Below, in pieces: positions 10,484-59,807 of a stretch of DNA of 64,000 nucleotides. Made by a program: the position numbers and the translations under genes. The notes beneath the pieces were generated by a model. That model was given only the letters and a program-made list of their open reading frames with translations, had not been told where the DNA came from and made no database searches. The DNA lies in the IMG/VR virus record IMGVR_UViG_3300042305_001773, positions 1-64,000 of that record. The stretch is one strand, 5' to 3'. Positions within the stretch are counted from its first letter, which is position 1. Each line of letters opens with the position of its first letter.

Positions 10484-12364
10484 TCACGGCTTCCACCCGC
10501 TTGTTGCGCCTGTTACACCGAATTGCTCGCCTTGGGCTAAAGCAGGCACATAACTGCTGCCCGCGGTATCGCTGCTTAAACCGCGCTGTACGCTGTTCAT
10601 AAGCCCCTTTTCTTGATACGAACCCAGCATGCGGGTCATCCAATCCGGGTCGTTTGAGATGTTTGCCATGCCGCGCACCATTTCGGGCTGGAACGGCGGC
10701 GGTTCTTTGTGGGCCTGAATTGTTTTTACGCCGTATTTGTTTAAGTTTGTCAGCACGTTTTTACCGATCTTTGTGCCAATTGAATAGTGCAGTACCGGCT
10801 TTTCGAGGTAATGCCCTGTTAAAGTGCTGGGCGCGGCCGATACACTTCCTTCGCGCGGCGTCCAATTACGCTCAATAGTCGAATACGGCACCACGTCATC
10901 TGGTACGTAATCACCGTACTCGTCGGTAAGGCGTACGTGATTTACAAGACCGCGCGCTAACAGCTCGATGTTGCGGCGATGGGCCGTAATACCGCTGTTA
11001 CCCATGACTTGCCGCATGGCCTGCACGAAGTAACGACGGCCTTCGCCTACGCCCTTGTGCCTGACAATTTCTGCCGGATTTGGCATACCCTCTGATATAA
11101 CGTCACCAGCTTCAAGCTCATCGCCCTTTTTGACCGAAAGATTTCTCTCTGTCGGAACATAGTGGTCCTGACCGTTAATCTGCACATAGTGGCCGCCCTG
11201 CGGAGCCGGACGAACTTCCTGTACCCGGCCGTCGAGCTGCGCGTGCACGGCGCCGTCTGGATATTTTTTCGGGACCTGTACAAGCGCGTTGAGCGCTTTA
11301 AAACCAGAAATCGCTCCTGCGCCGCCGACACCGCCAGAATGCTTCGAGCTGATCTGGCTTTGCGTGACTGGTTCCGACAGCGCTTGTGCTGCCGCGATAC
11401 CCACATAATCTCCAATAGGCGGTAAACGCCCTTTTTCCCTGTAACCGACGTCTTTCGCATAAACTCCACCGTCTCCCGGACCGCCGACAATCGGGCTGCG
11501 GACTAAGATATCTTTGGCGCCGCTTTCTTTCAGATCCCGCAGAATCTTTGGCGTCAGCATCGTATTGCGCTTGTACGGCCCGACGGCTCGCGCAAGAAAC
11601 GCGCCTTCGTTATCGGGATCGTCTACGTCGGTCGGGTAGCCGCGCTCTTCTGCCGCCATACGCCGTTCTTCGTCCGTGTCGTCATCATCGTCAGCTGTCA
11701 CAAGCAGGCGGTGCGTCATCTGCGCCAGTTGTTTACCGTAGAAACCGGCGTCAGCTGTAGCCGTCTTGAGGTCGATAACGCCTTTGCGTGTACCGAACGC
11801 GCCGGCGAAATACTCCACCGGGCGCAAACCTTGACTGTAGCCGCGCAGCACCGGAATTGGAATCGGGTCGCCGCGGTGGTCGAGATACTGCATGTCGGCG
11901 CCGAGGATTGAATTCAGCTGAAACTTATTACCGACACCCGACCCGGCAATCTGATGCGCTAAAGGGTTATCTTGGCCCTCAGCTTCCTTGTATACCTTGT
12001 CGAGCAGTTCTTGTTGCGCCGTCTGCGCCAATTCAAGCAGTTTGATATTGCGCTGTTTTTCGTCAAGCCGTTTGTCAGCAAAGATGTCGCGCATCTGACT
12101 CTGTACGCGCAGCTGAACATGCCGCGCGGCCAAAGTCGGCCGAATATCTTTTAACCCAAAAGACAGGCCGTTCGTTGTATATCCGGCGTCACGACCGATA
12201 TCGTGAAGTCGTTTCATAACTTCGCGATATTTTTCTGGGTGATTCTTCGCCAGATCGGTGGCGACGTTTGACATAGTTTTTTTGGTCAATACGCGATCGT
12301 AATCGCGCATCTCTGGCGGCAACGCTTCGTTAATCAGAAGTTGTCCGAGCGTTGTCTTCAGCAT
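10484..12364 (-). CDS. rpoC: RNA polymerase beta' C-terminal subunit
   Basis: Bridge helix (GTRKGVIDLKTATADAGFYGKQL), trigger loop (GIAAAQALSEPVTQSQISSKHSGG), HRRNIELL. Confidence 0.92.
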   Translation of the reverse strand: MLKTTLGQLLINEALPPEMRDYDRVLTKKTMSNVATDLAKNHPEKYREVMKRLHDIGRDAGYTTNGLSFGLKDIRPTLAARHVQLRVQSQMRDIFADKRLDEKQRNIKLLELAQTAQQELLDKVYKEAEGQDNPLAHQIAGSGVGNKFQLNSILGADMQYLDHRGDPIPIPVLRGYSQGLRPVEYFAGAFGTRKGVIDLKTATADAGFYGKQLAQMTHRLLVTADDDDDTDEERRMAAEERGYPTDVDDPDNEGAFLARAVGPYKRNTMLTPKILRDLKESGAKDILVRSPIVGGPGDGGVYAKDVGYREKGRLPPIGDYVGIAAAQALSEPVTQSQISSKHSGGVGGAGAISGFKALNALVQVPKKYPDGAVHAQLDGRVQEVRPAPQGGHYVQINGQDHYVPTERNLSVKKGDELEAGDVISEGMPNPAEIVRHKGVGEGRRYFVQAMRQVMGNSGITAHRRNIELLARGLVNHVRLTDEYGDYVPDDVVPYSTIERNWTPREGSVSAAPSTLTGHYLEKPVLHYSIGTKIGKNVLTNLNKYGVKTIQAHKEPPPFQPEMVRGMANISNDPDWMTRMLGSYQEKGLMNSVQRGLSSDTAGSSYVPALAQGEQFGVTGATSGWKP

Positions 12365-13343: not shown

Positions 13344-16300
13344 TTACGTATTATCTTCCACAATATGCACCGGGGTGTCCACCTCTATTTCGCCGCGTCG
13401 GTATGCCTGTACGGCATCCTGCTTGCTACGAAACACGCGGGGTTTGGCTTTTTTACTGATCCGACTGGACGCCAAGTATAACCCAGTCTGGTAGTCTTTG
13501 TTCGGAACGTAGTGCGCGCGAAAGGTAGACGCAGCAAACAAATTTTTGCTCGGCAGCATCTTTTCAACGGCTTCTTTCGCGGCGTCTTCTGTACTTGGGA
13601 CGTGATACTGCATCGCGTCTCCGTCGAAGTCGGCGCCAAACCCCTTGGTGATCACGGGGTTTACTTCCATAACTTTGTTCTTCGTCAGCTTAGGGTAAAA
13701 CGCCATCATGCCGTAACGGTGTAAAACAGGCGCGCGATTAATAACAATCGGTCGCGACGACATCTGACGGTCAAGCTCGGCGAACGCTTCTTTATTCTTA
13801 TCTTCAACCGCCTGCATCGCCTGCATGCGCGGGAGGCCCCGACGGACGAGGCCGCGGACGACAAACGGTTTGTAAATGTCCCACGCTTTCTCTTCCGGTA
13901 GCGCAACCTCGTCCATATCCAGATCGGGGTTTGGTGTGATGACAGCGCGGCCGACGAGATCTACCGTCGAGCTAAGCAGTTTGCGCTGAACGGTGCCGTA
14001 CTTTGGCGAGTTACCGAACACGTGCCGCAGGAAACCTTTGACATTACGCTCGACGTTCTTGGGCTGCTGCGGCTCGCCTAACCCGGTAACAGCCTTCATT
14101 GAGTCGTACACACTTAGCCGCTCGTCGCCGTAATCAGTTAGCGCGCCAGATGCTTCTTTCAGCGTGTCGTTGGCGTCGAGCAGTTCTTTGTACAAATAGT
14201 TAGCATCAGCTACGAGCGGGAGCTTTTTACTTCCCATTGTGCTCACGGGACGGAAGAGCGGCGGCAAGACTGGTACTTTACTGATCATCCAGTCTTTAGG
14301 GTGCACGCCGGTTGTTTCAGCACTCTTCAAAAAACCCAGCCGGCGCACGGCAGCGTCGCGTAGCGTCTTGCGCCCGGACTTGATATCTAAACGAGCCTGC
14401 TCAATTGCCTTCGGTAAGTTAATTCTTTCGAGCGCGGCTTTGATCGCTGTCGGGCCGGTTTTATCGCCCAGCTGCTCTCGGCCGGCCAGCACACCGCGGA
14501 ACTGCTTCTCGGTCAGGCCAAGCACACGGCGAATCGGGTCTTCCATGACGGGGTTAGGCAGCGGCTCGTGCAACGTGATCTTGCTCCACCGATTACCGCC
14601 GTGACCGCCTGTTAATGTCTCGTCAAACAGCCCGCCTGCAATAGGCTTGAGCCGCCCTTTCCAGTCCACGGTCTCGGAACTCTTTAGCTCGCGCGCGCCT
14701 GCCAGCTCGTCGACGTCTTTGTCGGTCATCGCCATCAAGTTTGAGCGCGTACCCTTGCGCACAACGTTGATACCCGACGCCTTGAGTTGGGTGACAAACT
14801 TCTCGTAAACGTGCGGTACTTTAGGCAGCGGCGGCGTATATCCGGCCATGAACTGCGACCAGTATTCGGGGTTAGCTTGGCCGCGCACCATCTTGGCATC
14901 GCGAATAACCTTGCCGGCACCGTGTGACAGTAACGCGCCCAGATCCAACATGCCGATGCGCTTGGCGCCTTCGCTGCCACCTTTTGCTGGTGTACCTTCG
15001 GCGGTATACGCGCCCATCGACCGGCCTTGCGCCTTTGACTCGCTGGTGTGGTGCAACTTCATGAAGAACCGGTTGCCAGTGAGGACGCCGCCGATTTTAC
15101 GTCCAGTTTCTGGATCGATAACGTCTTCGGTATCTGACAGGCCGTGCGCTGCTAATTCTTTCTGCGCAAACTCAATCAGGTCGCGTTTGTTATCAAAGTC
15201 CTTGAGCTTGTACGGTTTGCCAGTCTTTGCCGCAACTTTACCCAGCGCAGCCTCGATAACTTGCGTCGGGTTAATGCGGCTGATCAGACCCAGCGGCGAG
15301 ACAAGAACTTCAAACGGGTTACCATCGCGATCCTTGGGCATCTGGTCGTCAGGTACGATCTCGGCAACGACGCCCTTATCACCGAAGCGCCCCGTGAGCT
15401 TATCGCCGACGTCCATGGGTGCTTGGTTCTTCACTACAACGCTCACACCCTTCTTGGTGTGCATAACGTCGGTCACGATACCGGGGGCATGATGCTCCCA
15501 CGTGATTGTCTCGTTGGTGAAGTTACCGGCACGCCCACGATGCACTTTGCCGTACACCGTGTCTTTCTTCTTTGCCACAAGCACAAGTGGATCACCAAAC
15601 TTAACCTCAGTGCCCTTTTTGATGGCGCCGTCGTCGTCAAAGTTGTCGAGATACTTTTTGTCGTACTCAGTCGGGAACAAACTCACGAACGCCTTCTTGC
15701 CAACGTGAGTGTTGTCGTCCCACTCGGCTTCGTGCTGATACATGTGCTCAGACGTCAGCCGCTTGGATGCAGATTCAGAAATAACTACCGCGTCTTCGTA
15801 GTTCTTGCCGCGAAACGGCAGATACGCCGTACGTAGATTAAGCCCTAGCGCGGCGCTGCCGTTTTGGTCAGTAAAGTTTGACCGCGCCAGCAGCTGTCCG
15901 GGTTCGACTGTGTCACCCGGTTTCACAAGCGGCGTCTGGTGTAAAAACGTTTTACGGTTGTACGGCATTTCGTTGTACAGATCGATCGTCTTCTTGTTAC
16001 CATCTTTGTCGCGCAGCACGATACCGTCAGGTGTCACGTCCACTACTTGTGCCCGCTCAGTAGCCCGTGTGGCGCCCAGCTTCTCGCCCATCTCGTCTTC
16101 GTGCGACACGCTTTCGTCGTCAGCCTTGGCAGACTGCAACAGCGGCGCCTCGGCGTTTACGAGCGGAAGCGCCTGCGTAAACATTCGGCTACCCATGATC
16201 ACGCGATGACCTTTGATCATGGATTTAATCGGCACCATGTTTGTGAGCGCCGAAAACGTCGTGTCCATGTTGGGCAGACTGAACTGCGCTTCTTTTTTCG

Positions 16301-17747
16301 GCACGTATTTCAGCTTGCCGTTTACGAGCGCGGCTACAACAGGCAGGTTGTTATCTTCTTCGCCCGGAAATACTAGCGGTGTGTCGGCCAGCTCTTGTGG
16401 TGTCTTGTACACCTTCTCGCCGGTTTTCATATCTATAACCGGCGTATACACCTTGCCGTCGGAGCCCTTCATGGCGCCGCGAGCAAACCGCATGTCGACA
16501 CCCACTTTTCCAGACTCGGGCGTGCGAAGGTAGTCGATAAACCCAAGGTGGCTGGGCTGCACAGAACGCGACTCAGCGGGCACGGCGTCGAGCGAACCGA
16601 TGCCGCCCTCACCCATGCGCGTTACACGGGTCTGGTGGTCAAAGATCTCAGCCGGGTTGATTTCTTCAAGACTCGACCCCAAACCGCTGCCAATAAGCGC
16701 AGCTGAGATTGCCTTGTCGAATACACCCGACGGAATGTGATCAATTGACTTCTTCGCCGTGGCTTTCCAGAGTAGCTTGTTAAGAGACTGCCGGTCTTTG
16801 GTAAACCGCTCGGCAATGAGGTCTTCCGGGCCGACGACGGACTGATACACCATGTTGTCTCGGTCGTCGCTCTCGGCCTCGCGGCGATTCACTGCGATTA
16901 ATTTCTTAGTGATCGCCAGAATCGTCTCCGGCGTCATGTTCTTGTATTCAGAACCCAGTGTGCGCCGGGTGACTTCCGGGTCGAGTTCGGTCTTGGCAAA
17001 CTCGGCCGCGATCGCCTGCGCTTTGGCAATGGCGTCTGCGCCCGCGACTGGTTTATTTACAAGCCGGGCGTAAATTTTATCCAGCGTACCCGCATCGCCC
17101 TTCTCCATGTTGACCGCGGTGATCTCGTTGCCCCATGCTTTGCGAATGTCCTGATCCGACACGCCCATAGATTTGAGCAGCGGCATGAGCGGGATCTGCG
17201 CCTGCCCGATGCTGATCTTAAACACGCCAGTCTTGGGGTCGAGGAAGTACCGGTGCGAGCGACCCTTACCCGGAAGCGTGTTTACATGCGCCTCGATTTC
17301 GCCGTTGTCTTTTTCGCGGGTAAACACGCCGGGACGCAACCGCATTTGGTGCGCAAGGGTGTACTCCACACCGCCGTTCACAAACGTGCCAGAGTCGGTG
17401 AGGTACGGCACGTGAGCGATCGTGGCGCGGCGCTGGCCTACAGGCTGGCCGGTTTTGTTATCTGTAAGCGTCCACGTACCTTGCAATCGCCGGGCGAGTG
17501 TCCCTCTAGAAAGGACAGCTTTCTTTTGATCTGCCCTCGTGAAACGTTCAGGTCCTGTGTACCCGACGTCTTGAAGCTGCAGCGTATACAGGTCGTTCTG
17601 CAGCGGCTTGAGACTCTGCGCGCTGTTCAGCGCCTGATTGAAAATGTTATCGCGCATCATGCCAACATCGCCGAATGTGCGCATTGTGGGCGCAACGGGC
17701 GCGGGCATCATCGACGACTTTAGCTCGGGCAGCTCGGGGGCTGGCAT
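13344..17747 (-). CDS. rpoB: RNA polymerase beta fused to beta' N-terminal half
   Basis: beta motifs RTPESGKVG, NYEDAVVIS, GDKLTGRFGDKGVV, MKLHH; beta' motifs VPVLPPLFRP, NRAPVLHR and catalytic GADFDGDAM. Confidence 0.95.
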   Translation of the reverse strand: MPAPELPELKSSMMPAPVAPTMRTFGDVGMMRDNIFNQALNSAQSLKPLQNDLYTLQLQDVGYTGPERFTRADQKKAVLSRGTLARRLQGTWTLTDNKTGQPVGQRRATIAHVPYLTDSGTFVNGGVEYTLAHQMRLRPGVFTREKDNGEIEAHVNTLPGKGRSHRYFLDPKTGVFKISIGQAQIPLMPLLKSMGVSDQDIRKAWGNEITAVNMEKGDAGTLDKIYARLVNKPVAGADAIAKAQAIAAEFAKTELDPEVTRRTLGSEYKNMTPETILAITKKLIAVNRREAESDDRDNMVYQSVVGPEDLIAERFTKDRQSLNKLLWKATAKKSIDHIPSGVFDKAISAALIGSGLGSSLEEINPAEIFDHQTRVTRMGEGGIGSLDAVPAESRSVQPSHLGFIDYLRTPESGKVGVDMRFARGAMKGSDGKVYTPVIDMKTGEKVYKTPQELADTPLVFPGEEDNNLPVVAALVNGKLKYVPKKEAQFSLPNMDTTFSALTNMVPIKSMIKGHRVIMGSRMFTQALPLVNAEAPLLQSAKADDESVSHEDEMGEKLGATRATERAQVVDVTPDGIVLRDKDGNKKTIDLYNEMPYNRKTFLHQTPLVKPGDTVEPGQLLARSNFTDQNGSAALGLNLRTAYLPFRGKNYEDAVVISESASKRLTSEHMYQHEAEWDDNTHVGKKAFVSLFPTEYDKKYLDNFDDDGAIKKGTEVKFGDPLVLVAKKKDTVYGKVHRGRAGNFTNETITWEHHAPGIVTDVMHTKKGVSVVVKNQAPMDVGDKLTGRFGDKGVVAEIVPDDQMPKDRDGNPFEVLVSPLGLISRINPTQVIEAALGKVAAKTGKPYKLKDFDNKRDLIEFAQKELAAHGLSDTEDVIDPETGRKIGGVLTGNRFFMKLHHTSESKAQGRSMGAYTAEGTPAKGGSEGAKRIGMLDLGALLSHGAGKVIRDAKMVRGQANPEYWSQFMAGYTPPLPKVPHVYEKFVTQLKASGINVVRKGTRSNLMAMTDKDVDELAGARELKSSETVDWKGRLKPIAGGLFDETLTGGHGGNRWSKITLHEPLPNPVMEDPIRRVLGLTEKQFRGVLAGREQLGDKTGPTAIKAALERINLPKAIEQARLDIKSGRKTLRDAAVRRLGFLKSAETTGVHPKDWMISKVPVLPPLFRPVSTMGSKKLPLVADANYLYKELLDANDTLKEASGALTDYGDERLSVYDSMKAVTGLGEPQQPKNVERNVKGFLRHVFGNSPKYGTVQRKLLSSTVDLVGRAVITPNPDLDMDEVALPEEKAWDIYKPFVVRGLVRRGLPRMQAMQAVEDKNKEAFAELDRQMSSRPIVINRAPVLHRYGMMAFYPKLTKNKVMEVNPVITKGFGADFDGDAMQYHVPSTEDAAKEAVEKMLPSKNLFAASTFRAHYVPNKDYQTGLYLASSRISKKAKPRVFRSKQDAVQAYRRGEIEVDTPVHIVEDNT

Positions 17748-22492: not shown

Positions 22493-23320
22493 TCACGTTT
22501 GCGGCACAAGCACATACGGACGGCCGTTAATTACTAACGTGCCGTTTATCTGCAGACCGGCGTCTTTAGTGATGGGATATGCCGTGGTGCGCTTACCATA
22601 TAATTTGATGATTTCAGCCGTGTCGCCGTCTTGTGGCTTTGTTACGTTGGGGTCGTAGTACGGCGCCATCAGGTTACCGTTAGCCAGATGCGGTAAACCG
22701 AGCGCGTGACCAAGTTCGTGGCAAATAACCGCCACAGCCATGTTGAACGACCAGTCTTCGGCTTCGTCAAACATCTGGTCGAGCTGTACGTTTTCTGCGA
22801 CGCCACACGGCAGCTCGCTCCACGCCAGCGTGCCGCCTTTGTTATCTAAACCGCTTTTCTTGCCGGTCCCAGAACGAGCGTAGATATTAGCTTTTTTGTG
22901 CGTGTCAACGCGCACGGGATCAATCGCGCACACCTCAGCCCACTGCGAAAACGCAATGTCGTAAGCCTCGGCCACCTGCGCCGTTGTTAATCCCGGTAAA
23001 TGAATCTCGTGGTAGTACGAGATGTTGGGCATCGGCCATTTGCACGGATCGCCGCCGGGCGCTGTGATGTTGAAATCCGGCAACCCGCAGCGCCGCCGAT
23101 TGATACGATGCGCGGTCTTCGGGCCAACGGTACCTGTCGGATTCAGCCCGTTGAATTCCTGAAACGCCCGAATCGCTTTCTGCAGCTCAGCGCCTTTGAG
23201 CTTTTTAACCTGCGTAAGCGTCTTGTCGCCAAAATACCCCAGCGCATGAAGCCGCCGTAAAATTTCACTAATCGGCAGAACGTGCGGCTCGGGGGTGTGG
23301 TGTGTTGGCTTCCGTGCCAT
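22493..23320 (-). CDS. Matrixin (M10) metallopeptidase with PG-binding-like prodomain
   Basis: AIRAFQEFNGLNPTG, cysteine switch RRCGLPD, HELGHALGLPH, Met-turn LMAPYY. Confidence 0.88.
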   Translation of the reverse strand: MARKPTHHTPEPHVLPISEILRRLHALGYFGDKTLTQVKKLKGAELQKAIRAFQEFNGLNPTGTVGPKTAHRINRRRCGLPDFNITAPGGDPCKWPMPNISYYHEIHLPGLTTAQVAEAYDIAFSQWAEVCAIDPVRVDTHKKANIYARSGTGKKSGLDNKGGTLAWSELPCGVAENVQLDQMFDEAEDWSFNMAVAVICHELGHALGLPHLANGNLMAPYYDPNVTKPQDGDTAEIIKLYGKRTTAYPITKDAGLQINGTLVINGRPYVLVPQT

Positions 23321-25224: not shown

Positions 25225-25494
25225 TCAGCTTAAACCCATTAAAAACCGCACAAACACAAAAATCCACGCAAGCAAGCCGCTAATAGCAAAAAAAACCACA
25301 ACCGCGCTCAGGCTGACAACACGCCCGAGCTGCTGAATCGGAATTTCGCGCAACAACCGCCACGCTTTGAGGTAATCAATCGCGCCCGGTTGTTTAGGTG
25401 GCTCCGGCGTAGGTTCGGGGTTCGGTTCCGGCGTTACCGGATCTTTTTTACGCCCAAGGAGGTCACGTAATTTATCAAACAGCGCGTTAGCCAT
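25225..25494 (-). CDS. Membrane protein
   Basis: PE-rich linker, C-terminal TM segment. Confidence 0.5.
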   Translation of the reverse strand: MANALFDKLRDLLGRKKDPVTPEPNPEPTPEPPKQPGAIDYLKAWRLLREIPIQQLGRVVSLSAVVVFFAISGLLAWIFVFVRFLMGLS

Positions 25495-27325
25495 TCTTTT
25501 TACTCCAGCTTTGAATGGTGTCAAAGACGTCGTTGCCGTACAGCTGCGTCGCTTTGTCCAGCATGTTCATCTGCGGCAGTGTTCCAGTCGCGGCAGCCTG
25601 CGCCATTTGATATCTGTACTGCGGATCGAGCATCGAGCGATACAGGTGCGACTTCTGACGCGCGGCCAGAATGAAATCGCCGCGCTGCTTGGCCTTAAGC
25701 AGGTGATCGGTCACGTTTGCAAAGACCGGTTTGTTGTGGTCGTAGACAAACGGCGTCCGCAAATCGAGCAGGTTGCGGAACTGCTGCGCATATACGCTGC
25801 CTGTTGCTGCTTTCACGTGCGAACCTACGACTCCGGCCGGCGCATGAAACCGAAACTTCGTCGGTGTGTGCGTGATACCCTTGTATTTCGGCTTTGGATC
25901 GTCCACGTGCCAGTCTTGCGGTGATTGCGCAATTAATCGCCGCAAGATCTCGTGCTTTCGGTCATATTCGCGGCGATCAGAGTGCGTTTTCGCCGCACGT
26001 AACTCGTCCAGCGTGTTTGGTTTCTTTGTGCTGGGCTCTTCTTCTGCGCCCTTCTCTATTTCTTTGACTTTTTCGTAGTACAGGGGGTCTTCTTGCAGAT
26101 GATCCTTGGCAATTTCTTTGGCGACTTGATCGTTTCTTGTGTGCTCGTGCTCATGTTTAGCTCCTTCGGCTAAAGCTGGGGCAGAAAAATCCCGATCGGG
26201 TAAATTATCGGCTTCACCGCCCGGTAACAGGTCTTTTTGTCCCGAGCGGGAAAGTTCGGTGGCGGCTGTCTTAGCGACCACGGGCGCAAGCAGCTTTTTG
26301 ATGTCGGGGCCGATGTAGTCGTCGCCTTCGGGCAGGCCGGGCGCCAACGTGATGTAAGGATCGGAGCCGACTGTCGCTTTAAACACTCCCGGCTTGAGTT
26401 TGTGTTTTGCCAGCTCTAAGTAATGCTCATGCGTTTTTGACGGGTCGTTGCCCAGTGCGCGAAACGCGGTCGGTTTTACTTTGACGCCAAGTTCTTCGAA
26501 CAACTCGCGCGCCGCGGCTTGCTCCGGCGTCTCTCCTGTTTCCACGCCACCGCCGATAAAACGCCGTTTTCCGAGATTGTCGGGCCATTTTGGATTAGTA
26601 AGCGTTTCAAGCAAGTACTTATTTTCGTACGGTAACACAACGCGCACGCGAGGTTGTGGTGCGTCGGCAGCGGCTTTTAGCTCCCCCCTACTGATGGGGT
26701 TACTAAACCTATGCTCTTCCGTCGTTTCGGCAGGGGTTTCGTAACCCTTGGACTTACCGTTGTCGAGCAACACGCCTTTGCGGCGGGCGGCGACGGTAAT
26801 GTGGAACGGATGGTCGTCGTTGGGAAGTGCGGATAGGCCGTAACTCTTGCGCAGCGCCGAAAGCGCCGGACTGCTGACTTGCACGGCCCAGACTTTGCTT
26901 ACGCCATCTACGTTTTTGACGTCGATTTCTTTCAGGCCGCCCAGCGTGTAGCCGAACATGTGGCCGCGCTCATTGATCTTGTCAGCACCGATAGATGCTA
27001 CCTCATCCGCCGTCATCACCGATATATGCGCATTTACGAGATCGCCCTTAACGTTTGGAACGTTAAACACGCCCGCTGTCGGTAATTCAGCGCCGGGCTC
27101 GGTCAGGGCGTCGAACACACCGCGGACGAGCGCGTTCGGTACAGATAACAAAAGCCAGCCAGATTTGGCGAGATAGAGACGGCCGGCGAGCGGATAACTC
27201 GTGGCGGCCTGCTTGTTGCCGCTGCGATAGAGCCAGCCGAGCGCGTTACCGGCAATATAGGCAGGATGCTCGCGAAAGTAATGCGGTTCCCAAGCGAGCG
27301 GGTCGAGTGCTGAGAGGCTATCCAT
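25487..27325 (-). CDS. Multidomain protein: 2H phosphoesterase + Nudix hydrolase + DUF5661-like + unknown domains
   Basis: HISV/HITV pair; Nudix box GGVETGETPEQAAARELFEELG; EHEH...EIAKDHLQEDPLYY; domains separated by KQA, KAA, KTA, KGA, KAA. Confidence 0.8.
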   Translation of the reverse strand: MDSLSALDPLAWEPHYFREHPAYIAGNALGWLYRSGNKQAATSYPLAGRLYLAKSGWLLLSVPNALVRGVFDALTEPGAELPTAGVFNVPNVKGDLVNAHISVMTADEVASIGADKINERGHMFGYTLGGLKEIDVKNVDGVSKVWAVQVSSPALSALRKSYGLSALPNDDHPFHITVAARRKGVLLDNGKSKGYETPAETTEEHRFSNPISRGELKAAADAPQPRVRVVLPYENKYLLETLTNPKWPDNLGKRRFIGGGVETGETPEQAAARELFEELGVKVKPTAFRALGNDPSKTHEHYLELAKHKLKPGVFKATVGSDPYITLAPGLPEGDDYIGPDIKKLLAPVVAKTAATELSRSGQKDLLPGGEADNLPDRDFSAPALAEGAKHEHEHTRNDQVAKEIAKDHLQEDPLYYEKVKEIEKGAEEEPSTKKPNTLDELRAAKTHSDRREYDRKHEILRRLIAQSPQDWHVDDPKPKYKGITHTPTKFRFHAPAGVVGSHVKAATGSVYAQQFRNLLDLRTPFVYDHNKPVFANVTDHLLKAKQRGDFILAARQKSHLYRSMLDPQYRYQMAQAAATGTLPQMNMLDKATQLYGNDVFDTIQSWSKKNG

Positions 27326-27339
27326 AGCGCGCTTTCAAA

Positions 27340-27548: not shown

Positions 27549-27905
27549 TTACGGACGGTCATTGTCATGCTCGTGCTCCAGTTCGCGGTCACGTTCGTGC
27601 ACAATGGTTACTTTAATTCCGGCTCCAGCTAACAAAGAGATAGCAAGATCAGTTAAAGTGGACCCGCCCATGCCCGCCAGCACGCAAATGCCGATCAGGC
27701 CGTAGACGTTTTCGGATTTCCGATAGTTTTGATACCAAATCAGAGCGATAGCCAAGCCGAGAAATCCGGCGTTTAGCATCGCGCTGACTATCGCTAGTTT
27801 AGACAGTTTCTTGGCAAACCGCAAAAGGGTTGCCAACCCGGCAAACGCAGCTGCGCCAAACGCGCTCAAAAGCACCGACAACGAATGTAATGTTTCGTCG
27901 CCCAT
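27549..27905 (-). CDS. Putative holin
   Basis: Three TM helices, GICVLAGMGG, charged C-terminal tail. Confidence 0.6.
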   Translation of the reverse strand: MGDETLHSLSVLLSAFGAAAFAGLATLLRFAKKLSKLAIVSAMLNAGFLGLAIALIWYQNYRKSENVYGLIGICVLAGMGGSTLTDLAISLLAGAGIKVTIVHERDRELEHEHDNDRP

Positions 27906-28241: not shown

Positions 28242-28694
28242 CTAAATGTACCGTGCCGGAGAATTGCTGCACAGACCAGCTGGTTCAAACTGGTCGAGCC
28301 AGCCCGGGGCGTTTTCAGGAAGAAACGCAATCGCTCGCGGCGGCAATTCTCTTGGCGCCGGAGTCCAAATAAATTGCGCGCTAGTCAGCGTCGGCGTTTC
28401 GCTGTCGAAGAACGCGTGCGCGCCAACATTGCACAAAGCGTCGAGTGTGTCGCCGTCAAAGCACCGCGACCAGACGCGCTGCTTGGAGAAAAACCCGGGC
28501 GGGGCAATGTTAAACCCGCCGTCAAAAGGCAGCAGAAAACTACCCTGATGAAACACGACGTTTACGCACACATGCCAACCAGCGTTTAACGTCGCGGTAA
28601 CGTACGCCAGCCGATTTTCTTTTTCGGGCTGTGCGCCATGAATGTTGCCGAGATTGGCAATTAAAATACCATCAAACCGCGTGTTGCGCGCCAT
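28242..28694 (-). CDS. Degenerate glycerophosphodiester phosphodiesterase-like protein
   Basis: IANLGNIHG..EN..Y...LNAGWHVCVNV aligns with HRGN..EN..Y..AL..G.DVEID. Confidence 0.55.
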   Translation of the reverse strand: MARNTRFDGILIANLGNIHGAQPEKENRLAYVTATLNAGWHVCVNVVFHQGSFLLPFDGGFNIAPPGFFSKQRVWSRCFDGDTLDALCNVGAHAFFDSETPTLTSAQFIWTPAPRELPPRAIAFLPENAPGWLDQFEPAGLCSNSPARYI

Positions 28695-28781: not shown

Positions 28782-29816
28782 TCAAAGAATCTTGGCGGCG
28801 ATCAGGCAGCCCCGCGCGACAGCGTGCAGCGGATCTTTGGCGTGGCGAACTTCTTTCACCGGCAGCGGAAAACCATTCTCCGCAAGTTTCTTAGTGAACA
28901 TCTCCACGAAACCTTTGGCACGCGTTGTTCCGCCGGCTAGAGATATCAAAATCGGCTCTTTGAACTTGGGCAGCGCCTTGTGGTCACGGAGCGCAGAGGC
29001 GAGCTGCTTTGTCGTGTAATCGATTAAACGCTCGTAGTACACGCTCACGGCAGCAAGGATCGCGTTGTCTCCGCCGCCCTCACCAATCACAAACGTGCCG
29101 TGCTCTTTCTCCGCCTGAACTACCGAGTCCGGCTCGTTAGTTGCCACCGCGGTCATGCGGTCGATCCAGTCACCTGACTTGGTCGTCGAGAACAGCACCG
29201 TGGGCTCGCCGTTGAGCATCACGCACACGTTCACCATACCGGCGCCCCACGACAGGCCGATGCCGGTATAGTCGTCGTGCTCTAGCTCCGAGTAGCACAG
29301 CGCTTCGGCTTCGTTGATAGCCCGGGCGGCGTATCCCTGCTCAGCCAGCACCGTGCGCACCACGTCTTCGTGATACGCCACGTCGAAGTCGTCGTCTTCT
29401 TGGTCGACGGGCTGTGCCGGCACACAGAAGATCAGCTTTTCGTGGGGTGTGCTAGCCGTGCCGACCACTTCCTTGAGGATAAACGCCAGCACGCGCTTGG
29501 CTTCCTTTTCCTTGGGGCTGACGACACCACGGTACATGGGACGCTTGGCCGAGTCATTGCGCTCGACAGCTTTCTCGATGGCGTCTTGGCCGAGAATGAT
29601 AAAACTCCCGTCGGCGTCCTTTACGAAGACTTTGCCCTGCAGCCCCTTTTCGATCATCTTCGTGGCCACGGGCGTCGTCGGCTTGATGACGTAGAACGCA
29701 TCGCGAAAGTCTTTGTACTGCACGTTGCCGACCGTGTGCGGATCGGTCGTGGAGTTTGCGGTGGCGTCTTGGGCCAGCACGATAAACGATGTTCCGACGT
29801 CTAAACCTTTAGCCAT
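28782..29816 (-). CDS. Actin-like ATPase (MreB/MamK-related fold)
   Basis: Phosphate-1 GLDVGTS, connect INEAEA, phosphate-2 SWGAGMVN, adenosine LAGGTT. Confidence 0.85.
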   Translation of the reverse strand: MAKGLDVGTSFIVLAQDATANSTTDPHTVGNVQYKDFRDAFYVIKPTTPVATKMIEKGLQGKVFVKDADGSFIILGQDAIEKAVERNDSAKRPMYRGVVSPKEKEAKRVLAFILKEVVGTASTPHEKLIFCVPAQPVDQEDDDFDVAYHEDVVRTVLAEQGYAARAINEAEALCYSELEHDDYTGIGLSWGAGMVNVCVMLNGEPTVLFSTTKSGDWIDRMTAVATNEPDSVVQAEKEHGTFVIGEGGGDNAILAAVSVYYERLIDYTTKQLASALRDHKALPKFKEPILISLAGGTTRAKGFVEMFTKKLAENGFPLPVKEVRHAKDPLHAVARGCLIAAKIL

Positions 29817-29818
29817 GA

Positions 29819-29935
29819 TTACTTACCTTTTCGTTTAAGATTCTTCTCTAACTTTTTGATGTACTTCTCTTGCTCGTGCAATTTTTTACACTGCTGTTTG
29901 ACCTTCTTTTTCGTCCACTTGTCCCAGAAGCCCAT
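29819..29935 (-). CDS. Small basic protein, 38 aa
   Basis: MGFWDKWTKKKVKQQCKKLHEQEKYIKKLEKNLKRKGK; fills the gap with TGATG coupling. Confidence 0.5.
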   Translation of the reverse strand: MGFWDKWTKKKVKQQCKKLHEQEKYIKKLEKNLKRKGK

Positions 29936-30297
29936 CACTTTCCCTTTAGCTGCGCAAGCTTCGACACGGACGAACTAATATCATCCTGTGTCTGCGTTGT
30001 TTTGCCAAGTTCGAGTTGTTGCGTTTTTTGCAACGTCTCGGTGTTAATTGCGCCCACGTATTTACCAGTGTCGATTTCAATCTTACCTTTGCCGGACGCA
30101 CTTTCTTTCATGGCCGCGCGCAGAGTATTTGTCGCGGGAAGTACAGATGTTGTCGGCGCGTATGTCGGCACAATACCGGCCATGCGTGCCACGAGCCAGT
30201 CCAGCCGGCCGATTGCGTAACCCAGCGCCACGCTTCCGGCGACAATTAACGCGACAACAGAGTAAGGCAGAATTAACATGTTTCCGGCTTGCGCCAT
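29935..30297 (-). CDS. Membrane-anchored protein
   Basis: N-terminal TM segment; just upstream of the actin-like gene. Confidence 0.55.
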   Translation of the reverse strand: MAQAGNMLILPYSVVALIVAGSVALGYAIGRLDWLVARMAGIVPTYAPTTSVLPATNTLRAAMKESASGKGKIEIDTGKYVGAINTETLQKTQQLELGKTTQTQDDISSSVSKLAQLKGK

Positions 30298-30977
30298 CCC
30301 CGGTGTGATTTGATGCGCCCGGCGTTCACACTGCGCATATGACAGTCACTGAGTCCGTTATGGCGACAAAAGTCTTTCAGATTGTGAATGATAACGACGT
30401 CGCCGTCTGGGTTGAGAAAGTTGTAGGTCTTGGCGTACTTTTCGCGAATCACGTTGCGCCCGCGCTCACGCAACTCTTCCATGCGCTGTTCGGGAATGCC
30501 GTGCACACCCGTTTTCATTTCGACTGATTTGGTGCCGCCAATGCTCGCCCATTTTTGCCGGGTTTCTGCGTCCATGCCCGCAAACCCAGACCCGTTGTCG
30601 TGCGAGCGCTGAGTGGCTAGTTTGCGCTGCGCGGGCGTGAGCAGAAATCGCCCGGCCGCGTTGCGATTTAAACAGACCTCTGGGCCCAAATGATCGGTGT
30701 CGGCGTGCGCTGTTTTAATCAGTTCTGTTTCTGCTTTTGATAACTCCACCGCGGCTTTTTTCGACTCCCGACGATATTGCGCCTGTAGCACAACTTTCAC
30801 GGCGTCTGCCTGATATTCGGCGTGCTCGGGATCGTTGTAGTGCGCAAACGTAACCGGCGACCCAAAGTAATAATGGTCATCTTCGGGGCTGCGGTCGGTA
30901 ATGCGCGAGCCGTAATAGAACTTGTACCCCAGCGACGGGTACAGGATTACGTACAAATAGTACCAGCGTTTACGCAT
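30273..30977 (-). CDS. Free-standing GIY-YIG/Seg-like homing endonuclease
   Basis: YLY...YYGSR...YFGS, CLNRN, C-terminal NUMOD-like NLKDFCRHNGL...HRGW. Confidence 0.7.
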   Translation of the reverse strand: MRKRWYYLYVILYPSLGYKFYYGSRITDRSPEDDHYYFGSPVTFAHYNDPEHAEYQADAVKVVLQAQYRRESKKAAVELSKAETELIKTAHADTDHLGPEVCLNRNAAGRFLLTPAQRKLATQRSHDNGSGFAGMDAETRQKWASIGGTKSVEMKTGVHGIPEQRMEELRERGRNVIREKYAKTYNFLNPDGDVVIIHNLKDFCRHNGLSDCHMRSVNAGRIKSHRGWRKPETC

Positions 30978-32017: not shown

Positions 32018-32560
32018 TCAGCTCCGTGAGTCCATGTTGTTTAACTTCCGTGCTTGCCGCAGATCGACGTCGGCCAGAATGCGCTGGATGTGCCGAGCGT
32101 CTTCGTAGCTATCCTGCAACTGATCTTCGTAGAACACTTCGAGATACGCTGCGGCGACTTTGTCGTCGAGCGACTTGAGTTGTTCAAGCCGTTTGGCGTA
32201 GGTCACAACCACTTGGCGTTCCAGCGTGTGCGCCTCAATTAAGATATCTTCGACGCGCGTGTACGTCTGGAACGGATGGCCGCCGGCACAAGGCTGAACG
32301 AAGTTAAACCCGTACAAGCAGTCCAGAAACTGCTGCACGTGATTTAGCTCGCCTTTGGCTGCTTCTGTGAGGAATTCTTTGTACTCTTCAGCGTGCAGGC
32401 CAGTGACAGCGCTGGCGTGATACAGATAGAACTGCAGATGCGTCCACTCGTTCTGCAGGTCTTCATTAATTAGTGTGACGAACTGGCCAATTGTGTATAC
32501 GCCCGGCTCGCCTTCGGGTCCGGGTTCGCCACTGTGGTTCGTTACTCCTGCGTCGGACAT
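32018..32560 (-). CDS. Ferritin-like/bacterioferritin-like protein
   Basis: NEW...Y, ELNH, LE..Y and EDARH diiron pattern. Confidence 0.75.
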   Translation of the reverse strand: MSDAGVTNHSGEPGPEGEPGVYTIGQFVTLINEDLQNEWTHLQFYLYHASAVTGLHAEEYKEFLTEAAKGELNHVQQFLDCLYGFNFVQPCAGGHPFQTYTRVEDILIEAHTLERQVVVTYAKRLEQLKSLDDKVAAAYLEVFYEDQLQDSYEDARHIQRILADVDLRQARKLNNMDSRS

Positions 32561-52219: not shown

Positions 52220-53362
52220 TCAACCTAGAGACCGGGTCTTTAGCACCAGCTTTTCCTGCGCGGGCCATAACAGCATCTGCTGCATGGTGTCCGTGCTGGT
52301 GACATCCTTGAGCAGCTTGAGGGCTGCCTGCGGATTCGCCTGTATTACCTCGGGAGCTGGCTTCTCTTCTTTGCACGCCCGAGATAAGTCTTCATACCGC
52401 GTATACGTATCCCACACCCAATCCTCGCCGTTCTCGGGGTTGTGTTTTTTCAGCTCCCCGGTCACGTAATGATTGGTTTGCACAAGGCCGTGTTTCCTTG
52501 TGCGAATGTAGGTATGTTCCCCGGTATGTGTTACGACCGCGTGTTCTTTACTCTCGGTACCGACCACGTGCGCGAAGAATGGCACCATGGTTTGCTGCGT
52601 ACGGAGATGAAAGACAAGCTTCTCGTAACTTGGCATCTTGTCGCAGACTGCTCGGACCCGGTGTAACGCAGGCCACGCTTGGAGCAGGTCTTTAACAGAT
52701 GCCGCGGTGTTTGTCACGTAGGCAAACGCCGAAGTTAACGAACGCCACCAGCTCGTGTCTGTGTCGTCTTCGTCTTCTTCTTCGACGAGCGACTTCACAA
52801 TCGGAGCTTGGTTGACCACCAGCCCCCACTGGTCTGACATCGCGCTGACGACGCCCACCATGCCCGCTACGCCCACCGAAGTGTAGCTTTTGCGGCCACG
52901 ATGAAAGCGAATCAGCTTGGTGTGCTTCCCAGTGGAGGGAGGCGTCACCCAGTCCATGTTGCGCACAATGACTGGGCTAGAATTCACATCGAAGCTGGCG
53001 GAACTGCAGCCACAACCATACATCTCTGCGAGAGACGTAAAGTCGTAGATTAAGTTTCCCAGCAGGAGCTTGCCGACAGGAACTTCGGCGTGCCGCGCAA
53101 TGCACTGAAGTTCCTGCGGATACTCAAGGTCTGTACCCGTAAGGATCCAGCCCCCGAGTCGTCCGCCGCCGCTTGTCACGCTCTTTACGACACTTTTCAT
53201 GGTGTCAGAAAGGTGTGGCAGGATTTCCTCGTCGACATGGGTTTCCACGTCTTCAAGGATGGCCTGAATCGCGTCGCCGTTCTGACGCGCGAATCCAGCC
53301 CAGCGTTCGTCTGGAGGAGCATCCAGATCGATGTCGTGAATCTTCCCGGTGTAAAGTTTCAT
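52220..53362 (-). CDS. Acid ceramidase/NAAA-like Ntn hydrolase
   Basis: IDLDAPPDERW, nucleophile GCSS, RNMDW, VQTNH. Confidence 0.8.
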   Translation of the reverse strand: MKLYTGKIHDIDLDAPPDERWAGFARQNGDAIQAILEDVETHVDEEILPHLSDTMKSVVKSVTSGGGRLGGWILTGTDLEYPQELQCIARHAEVPVGKLLLGNLIYDFTSLAEMYGCGCSSASFDVNSSPVIVRNMDWVTPPSTGKHTKLIRFHRGRKSYTSVGVAGMVGVVSAMSDQWGLVVNQAPIVKSLVEEEDEDDTDTSWWRSLTSAFAYVTNTAASVKDLLQAWPALHRVRAVCDKMPSYEKLVFHLRTQQTMVPFFAHVVGTESKEHAVVTHTGEHTYIRTRKHGLVQTNHYVTGELKKHNPENGEDWVWDTYTRYEDLSRACKEEKPAPEVIQANPQAALKLLKDVTSTDTMQQMLLWPAQEKLVLKTRSLG

Positions 53363-53757
53363 GACTCGGCCTGCTCTTTCTTGGGCTTGGGCGACAGACC
53401 GAAGTCGTCGTCTTGGCCCGGAAAGGGGACAGGGATGTCGAGCTTGGCACAGCACTGCGCGACCAGATTTTCCAGCCGCTCGATGTACGCCAAGTGCAAC
53501 GCAGCCCGAGCGTCCACGATTTTTTGGAAGCGTTCTTCCAGCAGCCGTCGTGCGACCATCAGCTCTTCCGCTGACACGAGACTCAGCCGCAACCGATTAG
53601 TCGCTTCTTCGGCTTGCTCGATCCGCTCGAAGGCTTTGTTCAGCGTGACGGTTAGAAAACCGACCACTCTGCCCAACTCTTCGACCCTGTCCTCTGCCGG
53701 CTTCGACGGGTCTTCCGGCAACCACTTGTTGATGTCCGTCTCAAATGTCTGGCTCAT
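53359..53757 (-). CDS. Coiled-coil hypothetical protein
   Basis: AAGGAG RBS; ATGA coupling to the next gene. Confidence 0.65.
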   Translation of the reverse strand: MSQTFETDINKWLPEDPSKPAEDRVEELGRVVGFLTVTLNKAFERIEQAEEATNRLRLSLVSAEELMVARRLLEERFQKIVDARAALHLAYIERLENLVAQCCAKLDIPVPFPGQDDDFGLSPKPKKEQAES

Positions 53758-59466: not shown

Positions 59467-59807
59467 TGGAGGCGGCGGGAATCGAACCCGCGTCCAGAAT
59501 GGTTTCCACGTAAACGTCTACATCGTTAGCGCGTTGTTCTCACACTACGCGCAAAGCCAGCCGATTATCGGCGTCAGGTGGGCTACCACCATCTTTGGCT
59601 GTCTCTCCAGCCTGTCCGCCGTCTTCCCGGCTTCCAGCGTGATGGGCGATAACGTCACGCGCGTTACCCGGTCACTGCTCAGGCAGCGAGAGCGGGGACA
59701 CTGTTGAAAGTGCCAATTAACATGTAATCGATTTTTATGCTGGCCCTTCGATCAACCAGCCGATGCAATCTACGCTTCTCTCCATCTGTCGATACCAGTA
59801 CGCCCCC
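59467..59807 (-). ncRNA. ssrA: tmRNA; tag (A)GTFNSVPALAA*
   Basis: GGGGGCG/CGCCTCCA acceptor with G3-U70; GGACGCGGGTTCGATTCCCGC T-arm; tag ORF ending ALAA-TGA. Confidence 0.93.

What the first reader, a model, noticed from the sequence alone, without database searches (positions are those of the whole stretch)
28782..30297. Phage actin-like ATPase with adjacent membrane-anchored partner
Seen: all actin-fold motifs, preceded by a TM protein and a 38-aa basic ORF; both upstream proteins end in KGK. Established: phiKZ-like jumbo phages use tubulin PhuZ; actin-like proteins in phages are less characterised. Inference: membrane-tethered filament for positioning DNA or capsids.
Basis: partly seen in the sequence, partly recalled or inferred. 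Interest (0 to 1): 0.6.

Follow-up and report, generated by a model that had tools for sequence, protein, structure and literature searches.

The report
Jumbo-phage volactin-type actin with membrane anchor
A 205-kb bacteriophage carries a two-gene cassette, a small membrane-anchored protein followed by an actin relative of the archaeal "volactin" family. The same pairing occurs in hundreds of large phages, in some bacteria and in salt-loving archaea, so it probably builds membrane-tethered filaments inside the infected cell.

Summary
Window 28782-29816 (-) encodes a 344-aa actin-fold protein. It is preceded by a 120-aa single-pass membrane protein (29935-30297) and a 38/39-aa basic ORF (29819-29938).

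The actin is a full-length member of Pfam Volactin (210 bits). It is not MreB, ParM, MamK or FtsA. Its model (pLDDT 91.5) is closest to filament formers: MamK Z 27.5, BeeR, MreB, F-actin.

The membrane protein lies directly upstream of the actin in all 80 related loci held (78 at E<=1e-4), many on ~200-kb phage contigs. It keeps an invariant C-terminal helix, SVSKLAQLKGK. Complex prediction gives weak support for binding (0.53, best control 0.02).

The small basic ORF is facultative (8 of 81 loci). The shared KGK ending is largely the actin gene's ribosome-binding site: AAAGGR at -14..-9 in 51 of 51 junctions.

Two further phage clades, sampled Pseudomonadota and haloarchaea also place a partner gene upstream of a volactin-family actin. 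The haloarchaeal partner is the CdpA-like protein.

The genome has no tubulin or chimallin match. The filaments' cargo and function are inferred, not shown.

The parts
28782..29816 (-). Volactin-family actin homologue, 344 aa
   Evidence: Pfam PF25216 210 bits, full length. AlphaFold pLDDT 91.5. MamK Z 27.5, BeeR 26.5, MreB ~25, F-actin ~25. 33-36% identical to haloarchaeal volactin-family proteins. 73-98% identical in 80 related phage loci.
29935..30297 (-). Bitopic membrane partner, 120 aa (114 aa if started at the ATG at 30279). It has an N-terminal TM helix, a disordered cytoplasmic tail and a conserved C-terminal helix.
   Evidence: tblastn match directly upstream of the actin in all 80 loci held at E<=10, 78 at E<=1e-4. 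The gap is 1-3 nt in 53 loci. Invariant G26, R31 and SVSKLAQLKG. The model shows helix 3-40, a disordered tail and helix 112-118. No Pfam, PHROG or NCBIfam family. Complex prediction gives weak support.
30208..30276 (-). Transmembrane helix of the partner (about residues 8-30), followed by the GYxxGRxD juxtamembrane motif
   Evidence: Hydrophobic stretch with pLDDT ~90 in the model. Conserved columns in A3. N-out/C-in topology is inferred from the positive-inside rule (Arg31 and Arg38 after the helix, no charge before it).
29938..29985 (-). C-terminal amphipathic helix of the partner (DDISSSVSKLAQLKGK), the proposed actin-binding peptide
   Evidence: The most conserved part of an otherwise fast-evolving protein. 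A terminal KLxx[LMI][KQ]G-type ending is also seen in bacterial partners, and a GL[RK]GL[RK]GG motif in haloarchaeal CdpA-like partners. Profile comparison aligns the motifs but is not significant (E 0.059).
29819..29938 (-). Facultative 38/39-aa lysine-rich ORF inserted between partner and actin
   Evidence: Start overlaps the partner stop (TGATG). Intact with substitutions in L002, L008 and L009-L012, and present with a different 3' neighbour in L018. Absent from the other ~70 loci. One copy lies elsewhere in L027.
29825..29830 (-). Shine-Dalgarno-like AAAGGT for the actin gene, formed by the K-G codons of the upstream ORF's KGK ending
   Evidence: AAAGGR at -14..-9 in 51 of 51 distinct junctions. 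This holds whether the bases encode the partner tail, the small ORF tail, or are non-coding AAATAGGAGA.
28242..28694 (-). Conserved downstream neighbour, 150 aa, no family. Not shown to belong to the module.
   Evidence: Found downstream of the actin on the same strand in 46 of 77 loci with enough flank. No Pfam or NCBIfam hit.

Best explanation
This is a translationally coupled two-gene cassette of a 205-kb lytic-type jumbo phage of bacteria. The second gene is a member of the volactin family of prokaryotic actins. It most likely binds ATP and polymerises into filaments in the infected cell. The first gene is a bitopic inner-membrane protein with one N-terminal TM helix. Its cytoplasmic tail is disordered and ends in an invariant amphipathic helix (SVSKLAQLKGK). 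That helix most likely docks on the actin, so that filaments, probably their ends, are tethered to the cytoplasmic membrane. The same logic, a partner gene just upstream of a volactin-family actin, recurs elsewhere. Two other huge-phage clades have a small or mid-sized upstream protein with a clade-specific conserved C-terminal peptide. Some Pseudomonadota have a single-pass TM partner of 131-155 aa. Haloarchaea have the 4-TM CdpA-like DUF7139 protein. Shown: family membership, fold, gene linkage and the conservation pattern. Inferred: polymerisation, the binding site, the topology and the purpose. The purpose could be organising phage replication or assembly at the membrane, or reshaping the host cell.
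For: Family: PF25216 at E 8e-62 over its full length, against MreB_Mbl at 20.5 bits, below threshold. NCBIfam BeeR and MamK score only ~27 bits. Against plasmids, tblastn finds only haloarchaeal megaplasmid genes at 33-36% identity, and those score 436 bits on PF25216. Fold: pLDDT 91.5. Best solved matches are all filament formers: MamK Z 27.5 (rmsd 2.9 A, 290 residues aligned), BeeR 26.5, MreB ~25, F-actin ~25, crenactin 24. Linkage: the partner is immediately upstream in all 80 loci held (78 at E<=1e-4), usually 1-3 nt apart. Identity is 26-98% for the partner against 73-98% for the actin, yet the partner's C-terminal 11 residues are invariant. Complex prediction of actin with partner residues 60-120 gave 'weak support': score 0.53, best of 3 controls 0.02. 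That mark was reached by 58 of 80 solved complexes and 2 of 110 mismatched pairs. At 0.60 or under it was reached by only 7 of those 80, and by both mismatches that passed. The runs agree in at least 43% of contacts, and partner pLDDT is at least 40. My own alignments were used, so the counts hold only roughly. Parallels: an upstream partner with a conserved C-terminal peptide in two other phage clades. Bacterial three-gene clusters carry an N-terminal-TM partner ending KLxSMQG. Haloarchaeal volactin genes are preceded by a DUF7139 4-TM protein. The literature notes that CdpA-like HVO_2016 is adjacent to volactin HVO_2015 (PMC12126565), and that volactin forms dynamic filaments whose tips touch the membrane (PMC10869688). 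An intein sits in the conserved STTK|SGDW site of one relative, as expected for a constrained site.
Against: No experiment on any phage member exists in the library searched. The phosphate-2 Asp of canonical actins is Ser here and in the rest of the family sampled, so the ATPase chemistry may differ. The complex score is in the weak band, no interface was returned, and the partner's own fold is uncertain. Homology between the phage partner and the bacterial or archaeal partners is not demonstrable (hhalign E 0.059 and 0.089; hmmsearch found nothing). Part of the C-terminal conservation (KGK) is explained at the nucleotide level by the ribosome-binding site. Host, timing of expression and cargo are unknown.
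Confidence: 0.6

Rival explanations
1. The protein is a membrane-associated, non-filamentous or only oligomeric actin-fold scaffold of the PilM/FtsA type. It clamps the terminal peptide of a bitopic membrane protein (as in PilM-PilN or FtsA-FtsN) to assemble or regulate an envelope machine, for example one for lysis, DNA entry or exclusion, rather than a cytoskeleton.
For: The anatomy, an actin-fold protein plus a conserved terminal peptide of a single-pass membrane protein encoded next to it, matches PilM:PilN and FtsA:FtsN. Both appear among the Foldseek hits (5eou, 7q6i). The phosphate-2 Asp is Ser. A multi-pass 118-aa membrane protein is conserved nearby in 60 loci.
Against: PilM and FtsA are clearly worse structural matches (TM 0.47-0.56, rmsd 10-13 A) than MamK, MreB and actin (TM 0.6-0.7; Z 25-27.5). 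The model has the canonical four-subdomain layout, with no extra subdomain reported. The experimentally studied member of the family forms long dynamic filaments (PMC10869688).
Confidence: 0.15
2. It is a ParMRC/AlpAC-type DNA-segregation or DNA-transport system. The actin pushes or pulls phage DNA, and the upstream protein is the adaptor between DNA and filament.
For: Phage- and plasmid-borne actins of known function mostly move DNA, such as ParM and AlpC of prophage CGP3 (PMC4446434). The partner-plus-actin operon logic is similar. The partners of phage clade 2 are small soluble proteins that could bind DNA.
Against: The window's partner has a TM helix and no recognisable DNA-binding domain. 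No iteron or centromere-like repeats lie near the cassette. There is no sequence similarity to ParM (blastp E 65). Gene order (partner first) differs from parMR. Nothing in the ORFs scanned points to a plasmid-prophage lifestyle.
Confidence: 0.1
3. The cassette acts on the host rather than on the phage. It copolymerises with or competes against a host cytoskeletal system, either the host's own volactin-type module or MreB. The effect would be to block division or change cell shape and size during infection.
For: Volactin controls cell shape transitions in Haloferax (PMC10869688). About 7% of sampled genomes of one bacterial phylum carry a chromosomal volactin-type cluster with membrane partners, so some hosts may have a cognate system.
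Against: Phage clade 1 is a separate deep branch, not nested in the bacterial clade. Identity to the bacterial proteins is only 29-32%. The phage brings its own anchor, which suggests a self-contained system. The host is unknown.
Confidence: 0.12

Closest known systems
Volactin (VolA, HVO_2015) of Haloferax volcanii with its neighbour, the CdpA-like membrane protein HVO_2016 (Pfam PF25216; PMC10869688, PMC12126565)
   Same: Same Pfam family over the full length (210 bits). 33-36% identity to haloarchaeal family members. Shared S-[FWYC]-G-[AS]-G-[ML] phosphate-2 signature. A membrane protein with a long disordered or acidic linker and a conserved helical tail is encoded directly upstream (haloarchaeal megaplasmid loci).
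   Different: The carrier is a bacteriophage of bacteria, not an archaeon. The partner has one TM helix and 120 aa, against four TM helices (DUF7139) and ~300 aa. Partner homology is not demonstrable (E 0.059). The phage actins form their own deep clades.
MamK / MreB / BeeR bacterial actins
   Same: These are the closest solved structures (Z 27.5, ~25 and 26.5). They have the same four-subdomain actin fold, and all are filament formers.
   Different: Sequence relationship is marginal: MreB_Mbl 20.5 bits (below threshold), MamK 26.5 bits against a cut-off of 400, BeeR 27.8 against 530. No membrane-binding helix is evident in the phage protein itself, and the partner is different.
AlpC/AlpA of Corynebacterium prophage CGP3, and the ParM/ParR type II partition systems
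   Same: A mobile-element or phage-encoded actin with a dedicated small adaptor encoded next to it.
   Different: Those adaptors bind DNA and follow the actin gene. Here the adaptor is a membrane protein and precedes it. There is no detectable sequence similarity to ParM.
PhuZ tubulin spindle and chimallin nucleus of Chimalliviridae jumbo phages
   Same: A phage-encoded cytoskeletal polymer in a jumbo phage that also encodes multisubunit RNA-polymerase-like proteins.
   Different: The polymer is actin-type, not tubulin-type. The genome has no PF00091 match and no phiKZ gp54 match. The nearest cultured relatives by RNAP are Salmonella phage Arash and Vibrio phages D181, D148 and D69 at ~32%.
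PilM-PilN and FtsA-FtsN
   Same: An actin-fold protein captures a short conserved terminal peptide of a bitopic membrane protein.
   Different: Those peptides are N-terminal. PilM and FtsA have a rearranged subdomain and are poorer structural matches.

Membership tests
Volactin (Pfam PF25216) | Profile match above the gathering score over the whole domain | tested here: met
   210 bits against a cut-off of 35, E 8e-62, residues 1-341 on profile positions 1-321/321. Confirmed on the genome.
Volactin (Pfam PF25216) | Direct similarity to haloarchaeal family members | tested here: met
   tblastn/blastp 33-36% identity over 342 residues, E 3e-57 to 6e-68. Those proteins score 436 bits on PF25216.
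Volactin (Pfam PF25216) | Dynamic polymerisation into filaments whose tips contact the membrane (as shown for VolA) | not testable with these tools
   Known only for Haloferax VolA (PMC10869688). No data exist for any phage member.
Volactin + CdpA-like module | Adjacent CdpA-like partner with a 4-TM DUF7139 domain | tested here: not met
   The phage partner has one TM helix and no Pfam hit. The haloarchaeal partners hit DUF7139 at 124-163 bits. hhalign aligns only a 22-residue tail motif, E 0.059.
Filament-forming actin superfamily (actin/MreB/MamK/ParM) | Four-subdomain actin fold | tested here: met
   Model pLDDT 91.5. MamK Z 27.5 with 290 residues at 2.9 A. MreB and F-actin Z ~25.
Filament-forming actin superfamily (actin/MreB/MamK/ParM) | Canonical nucleotide-binding motifs, including the phosphate-2 Asp | tested here: inconclusive
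   Phosphate-1 DxGT, connect-1 Glu and adenosine GG are present and invariant. The phosphate-2 Asp is Ser189, in all 63 aligned phage sequences and nearly all cellular members examined.
MreB/Mbl | Family profile above threshold | tested here: not met
   PF06723 20.5 bits against 27, partial. TIGR00904 13 bits against 366. On the tree MreB lies on a branch of 5-10 changes per site.
MamK | NCBIfam NF040964 above cut-off | tested here: not met
   26.5 bits against a cut-off of 400. The similarity is structural only.
ParMRC type II partition | ParM-like sequence, DNA-binding adaptor and centromere repeats | tested here: not met
   blastp to R100 ParM E 65. The partner is a TM protein without a DNA-binding family hit. 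No iterons.
Nucleus-forming (Chimalliviridae-type) jumbo phage cytoskeleton | PhuZ tubulin and chimallin shell protein | tested here: not met
   No PF00091 match and no match to phiKZ gp54 in the 205-kb record. The chimallin search had no positive control, so very distant homologues cannot be excluded.

The most novel reading that the evidence does not exclude
Volactin-type actins with a dedicated tethering partner form a cross-domain cytoskeletal module shared by haloarchaea, some Pseudomonadota and at least three lineages of jumbo or huge phages. In the widespread ~200-kb aquatic phage lineage of this window it would form a membrane-anchored actin apparatus that organises phage replication or virion assembly. 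That would be an actin-based counterpart of the PhuZ spindle in phages that lack tubulin and chimallin. The short C-terminal helix of the partner would be the common volactin-docking element.
Probability: 0.25. Interest if true: 0.8.

Novelty: new variant of a known kind. Interest (0 to 1): 0.62.

Why it matters
Phage cell biology currently rests on one cytoskeletal paradigm, the PhuZ tubulin with the chimallin nucleus. This finding points to a second, actin-based system. It is abundant in environmental jumbo and huge phages: 271, 112 and 33 IMG/VR loci for the three clades, and 1984 proteins in the word search. It comes with its own membrane tether.

It also links three observations that have not been connected: volactin filaments touching the membrane in Haloferax, the unexplained adjacency of a CdpA-like membrane protein to volA, and uncharacterised three-gene clusters in bacteria. 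The proposal it yields is directly testable, namely that a short C-terminal helix docks on a volactin-type actin.

The small, well-predicted phage protein and its peptide-sized partner motif would be convenient material for the first structure of a volactin-family filament.

Tried and rejected
- PHROGs gave no hit for the actin, the partner or the small ORF.
- megablast of the region against INPHARED found nothing. tblastn found only two uncultured huge phages.
- A PDB sequence search with the family profile gave nothing better than E 0.06.
- The genome-contig scan returned only short, evidently mis-binned phage contigs in MAGs of five different phyla, so there is no host clue.
- The ESM Atlas look-alikes of the partner were uninformative: unnamed clusters and a TraJ cluster at 0.92-0.93, with no structural hit.
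- Partner homology across lineages was tested three ways and rejected as unproven. hhalign against the haloarchaeal partners gave E 0.059, with the expected motif aligned. hhalign against the bacterial small partners gave E 0.089 on a different segment. An HMM of the phage partner's last 49 residues, run against 2150 stop-to-stop ORFs of the cellular loci, did not pick out the upstream partners.
- Centromere-like repeats were not found.
- Sigma-70 promoter and terminator scans were uninformative, as expected for a phage that encodes its own RNAP-like proteins.
- The tree with MreB, FtsA and ParM as outgroups cannot be rooted reliably. Branches are 5-10 changes per site and ParM is misplaced by long-branch attraction, so no donor or order of events is claimed.
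There is therefore no expression or environment evidence from reads.
- Two genome-search runs failed on a syntax point and were repeated correctly.
- The claim does not rest on absence of relatives.
- KGK as a shared protein motif linking the two upstream ORFs was rejected in favour of the embedded ribosome-binding site.
Full report
**What is there.** The window is the first 64 kb of a 205,044-bp IMG/VR virus record that CheckV rates as complete. Almost all genes are on the minus strand, and the window holds six tRNAs and a tmRNA. At the finding's coordinates there are three consecutive minus-strand ORFs.
- A 120-aa ORF at 29935..30297. Its second ATG at 30279 gives the 114-aa form that most database entries use.
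- A 39-aa ORF at 29819..29938. The ATG at 29935, which overlaps the upstream stop as TGATG, gives 38 aa.
- A 344-aa ORF at 28782..29816.

**The actin.** Pfam places the 344-aa protein in Volactin (PF25216): 210 bits, E 8e-62, matching the whole 321-position profile. MreB_Mbl reaches only 20.5 bits on a fragment. NCBIfam gives weak partial matches to BeeR and MamK (~27 bits, far below cut-offs). PHROGs gives nothing.

With a 63-sequence alignment the AlphaFold model is confident (pLDDT 91.5, pTM 0.89). Its best solved neighbours are all filament-forming actins:
- MamK, Z 27.5 (2.9 A over 290 residues)
- BeeR, Z 26.5
- MreB, Z ~25
- F-actin, Z ~25
- crenactin, Z 24

PilM, FtsA and EutJ are clearly worse. 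In the viral structure library only Hsp70s and a few uncharacterised phage proteins appear, at TM <=0.6.

The nucleotide-binding motifs are present with one exception. The phosphate-2 Asp is Ser189 (LSWGAGM). S-[FWYC]-G-[AS]-G-[ML] turned out to be a signature of nearly all the phage, bacterial and archaeal members I examined.

**The partner.** tblastn of the three window proteins against 80 related IMG/VR loci showed two things.
- The 120-aa protein has a match directly upstream of the actin in every locus held (78 at E<=1e-4), usually 1-3 nt away.
- It evolves much faster than the actin: 26-98% identity against 73-98%.

The conserved parts are the TM helix with a GYxxGRxD juxtamembrane motif, an I-x-I-D...V..I.T segment, and an invariant C-terminal SVSKLAQLKG(K). 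Alone it is predicted as a long N-terminal helix (3-40), a disordered tail and a short C-terminal helix (112-118). The positive-inside rule puts the tail in the cytoplasm; this is an inference. No library names the protein.

- Score 0.53 (runs 0.53, 0.39, 0.56); best of three controls 0.02.
- The mark was reached by 58 of 80 solved complexes and 2 of 110 mismatched pairs.
- At 0.60 or under it was reached by only 7 of those 80, and by both mismatches that passed.
- The runs agree in at least 43% of contacts, and partner pLDDT is at least 40.
- My own alignments were used, so the counts hold only roughly.

**The small ORF and the KGK coincidence.** The 38-aa lysine-rich ORF is present, intact and with substitutions, in only a few loci: L002, L008, L009-L012, and L018 with a different downstream neighbour. 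One copy lies elsewhere in L027. It is absent from about 70 loci, where the partner abuts the actin. It is a facultative insert, not part of the conserved module.

I aligned the 25 nt before the actin ATG in 51 distinct junctions. AAAGGR is conserved at -14..-9 in all 51. This holds whether those bases encode the K-G of the partner tail, the K-G of the small ORF tail, or are non-coding AAATAGGAGA. The shared KGK ending is therefore best read as the actin gene's Shine-Dalgarno element embedded in whatever ORF precedes it. The eight residues before it in the partner are conserved at the protein level.

**The phage.** The window encodes the following:
- a 1467-aa fused multisubunit-RNAP beta-like protein and a second RNAP-like protein
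- PhoH
- a ferritin-like protein
- dCMP deaminase
- a NUDIX/2H-phosphoesterase fusion
- an M10 peptidase with a peptidoglycan-binding domain
- an HNH endonuclease

The nearest cultured relatives by RNAP are Salmonella phage Arash and Vibrio phages D181, D148 and D69, at ~32%. The tmRNA and the peptidoglycan-binding domain argue for a bacterial host. There is no tubulin-family match and no match to phiKZ chimallin. The chimallin search had no positive control.

Close relatives of the actin lie on many contigs of 193-211 kb. They also lie on short contigs mis-binned into lake and ocean MAGs of five phyla.

**The wider family.** Five groups of volactin-family actins emerged.
1. *Two further phage clades.* These are ~32-35% identical to the window protein and lie on contigs of 240-530 kb.
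   - The L089-like clade has an upstream 70-87-aa soluble protein ending W-A-I-P-D-F...K-I-N/K-F-G-K.
   - The L090-like clade has an upstream ~180-240-aa protein. It ends either A-L-K-A-L-R-K-like or H-E-E-F-V-Y-L-L-Q-Q-R-like.
2. *Haloarchaea.* Against plasmids, tblastn finds only haloarchaeal megaplasmid genes.
   - These are strong Volactin members (436 bits).
   - Each is preceded by a ~300-aa DUF7139 protein with four TM helices, an acidic linker, a V-x-G-L-R/K-G-L-R/K-G-G motif and a C-terminal helix.
   - This is the CdpA-like family, whose Haloferax member HVO_2016 has been noted to sit next to volactin HVO_2015 (PMC12126565).
3. *Bacteria.* A PF25216 search found ~235-246-bit genes in 20 of 300 further genomes from the phylum of a Pseudomonadota MAG, plus one truncated 100-bit match. 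It found matches in 18 of 200 further genomes from the phylum of an archaeal MAG, 14 of them full-length at ~375-415 bits.
   - In 18 of the 20 bacterial genomes with a full-length gene, the gene is the last of a three-gene cluster; the other two (L209, L210) lack these partners.
   - The first gene encodes a 530-610-aa protein with a TM helix near its C-terminus.
   - The second encodes a 131-155-aa protein with an N-terminal TM helix and a tail F-I-P-x-I-Q...R-T-V-x-R-S-x-E-D-V-A-x-K-L-x-S-M-Q-G.
   - The third is the actin.

The terminal KLxx[LMI][KQ]G resembles the phage tail, and the spacing of an upstream aromatic motif is similar. However, profile-profile and HMM tests do not establish homology. 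I therefore treat the resemblance as architectural.

A maximum-likelihood tree recovers five separate clades (phage 1, 2, 3, archaea, bacteria), three with SH-aLRT of 95 or more and two at 89-93 in at least one tree. The deep order is unresolved, and MreB, FtsA and ParM sit on very long branches. No direction of transfer can be claimed.

**Mechanism.** The best-supported reading is a self-contained, membrane-tethered actin system. The phage makes a volactin-type polymer and a bitopic anchor whose C-terminal helix docks on it. The one characterised family member forms dynamically unstable filaments that span the cytoplasm and touch the membrane with their tips (PMC10869688). That is the geometry a terminal-peptide anchor would produce.

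What the filaments do in infection is not addressed by any evidence here. Organising replication or assembly at the membrane, and remodelling host shape or division, are both open. A ParMRC-like DNA-segregation role is disfavoured for this clade because the adaptor is a membrane protein and there are no iterons. A PilM/FtsA-like non-filament scaffold is disfavoured by the structural ranking but not excluded.

**Novelty.** Phage and prophage actins are known (AlpC, PMC4446434), and so is volactin. I found no paper in the library that reports volactin-family actins in phages or their pairing with a tether. I rate this a new variant of a known kind. The actin meets the family's profile and similarity tests, while the partner and the viral setting are new.

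Noticed in passing
L088:2061-4175 (+), a relative of the window's actin; corresponds to window residues K213|S214 (about window 29175-29180): The actin homologue is a 704-aa open frame. A ~360-aa intein (Cys1 ... His-Asn / Ser+1, with a LAGLIDADG-type endonuclease motif) interrupts the invariant STTK|SGDW site. The genome search saw the same split match with no stops (G005:C50).
   Followed up: partly
It comprises a 530-610-aa protein with a C-proximal TM helix, a 131-155-aa N-terminal-TM protein ending ...EDVAxKLxSMQG, and a volactin-family actin. It is present in 18 of the 300 further genomes sampled; two more genomes (L209, L210) carry the actin without these partners.
   Followed up: partly
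window 30273-30977 (-): An HNH/homing-endonuclease-like gene (PHROG 2081) overlaps the 5' end of the partner gene. It is present at this position in only 25 of 80 related loci, so it is probably a mobile insertion.
   Followed up: partly
window 13344-17747 (-) and 10484-12364 (-): A 1467-aa fused multisubunit RNA-polymerase beta-like protein and a 626-aa RNAP-like protein. The nearest cultured relatives (~32%) are Salmonella phage Arash and Vibrio phages D181, D148 and D69. One Vibrio copy is split by a homing endonuclease.
   Followed up: partly
window 59467-59807 (-), and tRNAs at 27339, 60031, 60110, 60921, 61405 and 62032: A phage-borne tmRNA gene (tag GTFNSVPALAA) and six tRNA genes. tRNA-Asn lies just downstream of the actin neighbourhood.
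   Followed up: no
window 25487-27325 (-): A 612-aa fusion of a 2H phosphoesterase ('Swiss Army Knife'), NUDIX and DUF5661 domains. It is conserved downstream of the cassette in 54 loci.
   Followed up: no
window 27549-27905 (-) and 28242-28694 (-): A multi-pass 118-aa membrane protein (60 loci) and a 150-aa protein without a family (46 loci) are conserved just downstream of the actin. They may or may not work with it.
   Followed up: partly
window 22493-23320 (-); 52220-53455 (-); 32018-32560 (-): An M10 metallopeptidase with a peptidoglycan-binding domain, an acyl-CoA:6-APA acyltransferase/NAAA-like Ntn hydrolase, and a ferritin-like protein. These are auxiliary genes of unclear role.
   Followed up: no
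L018:3738-4000, between partner and actin: In this relative the small basic ORF is followed by a further short hydrophobic ORF and a canonical AGGAG before the actin start. The partner-actin junction is therefore a hot spot for small insertions.
   Followed up: no
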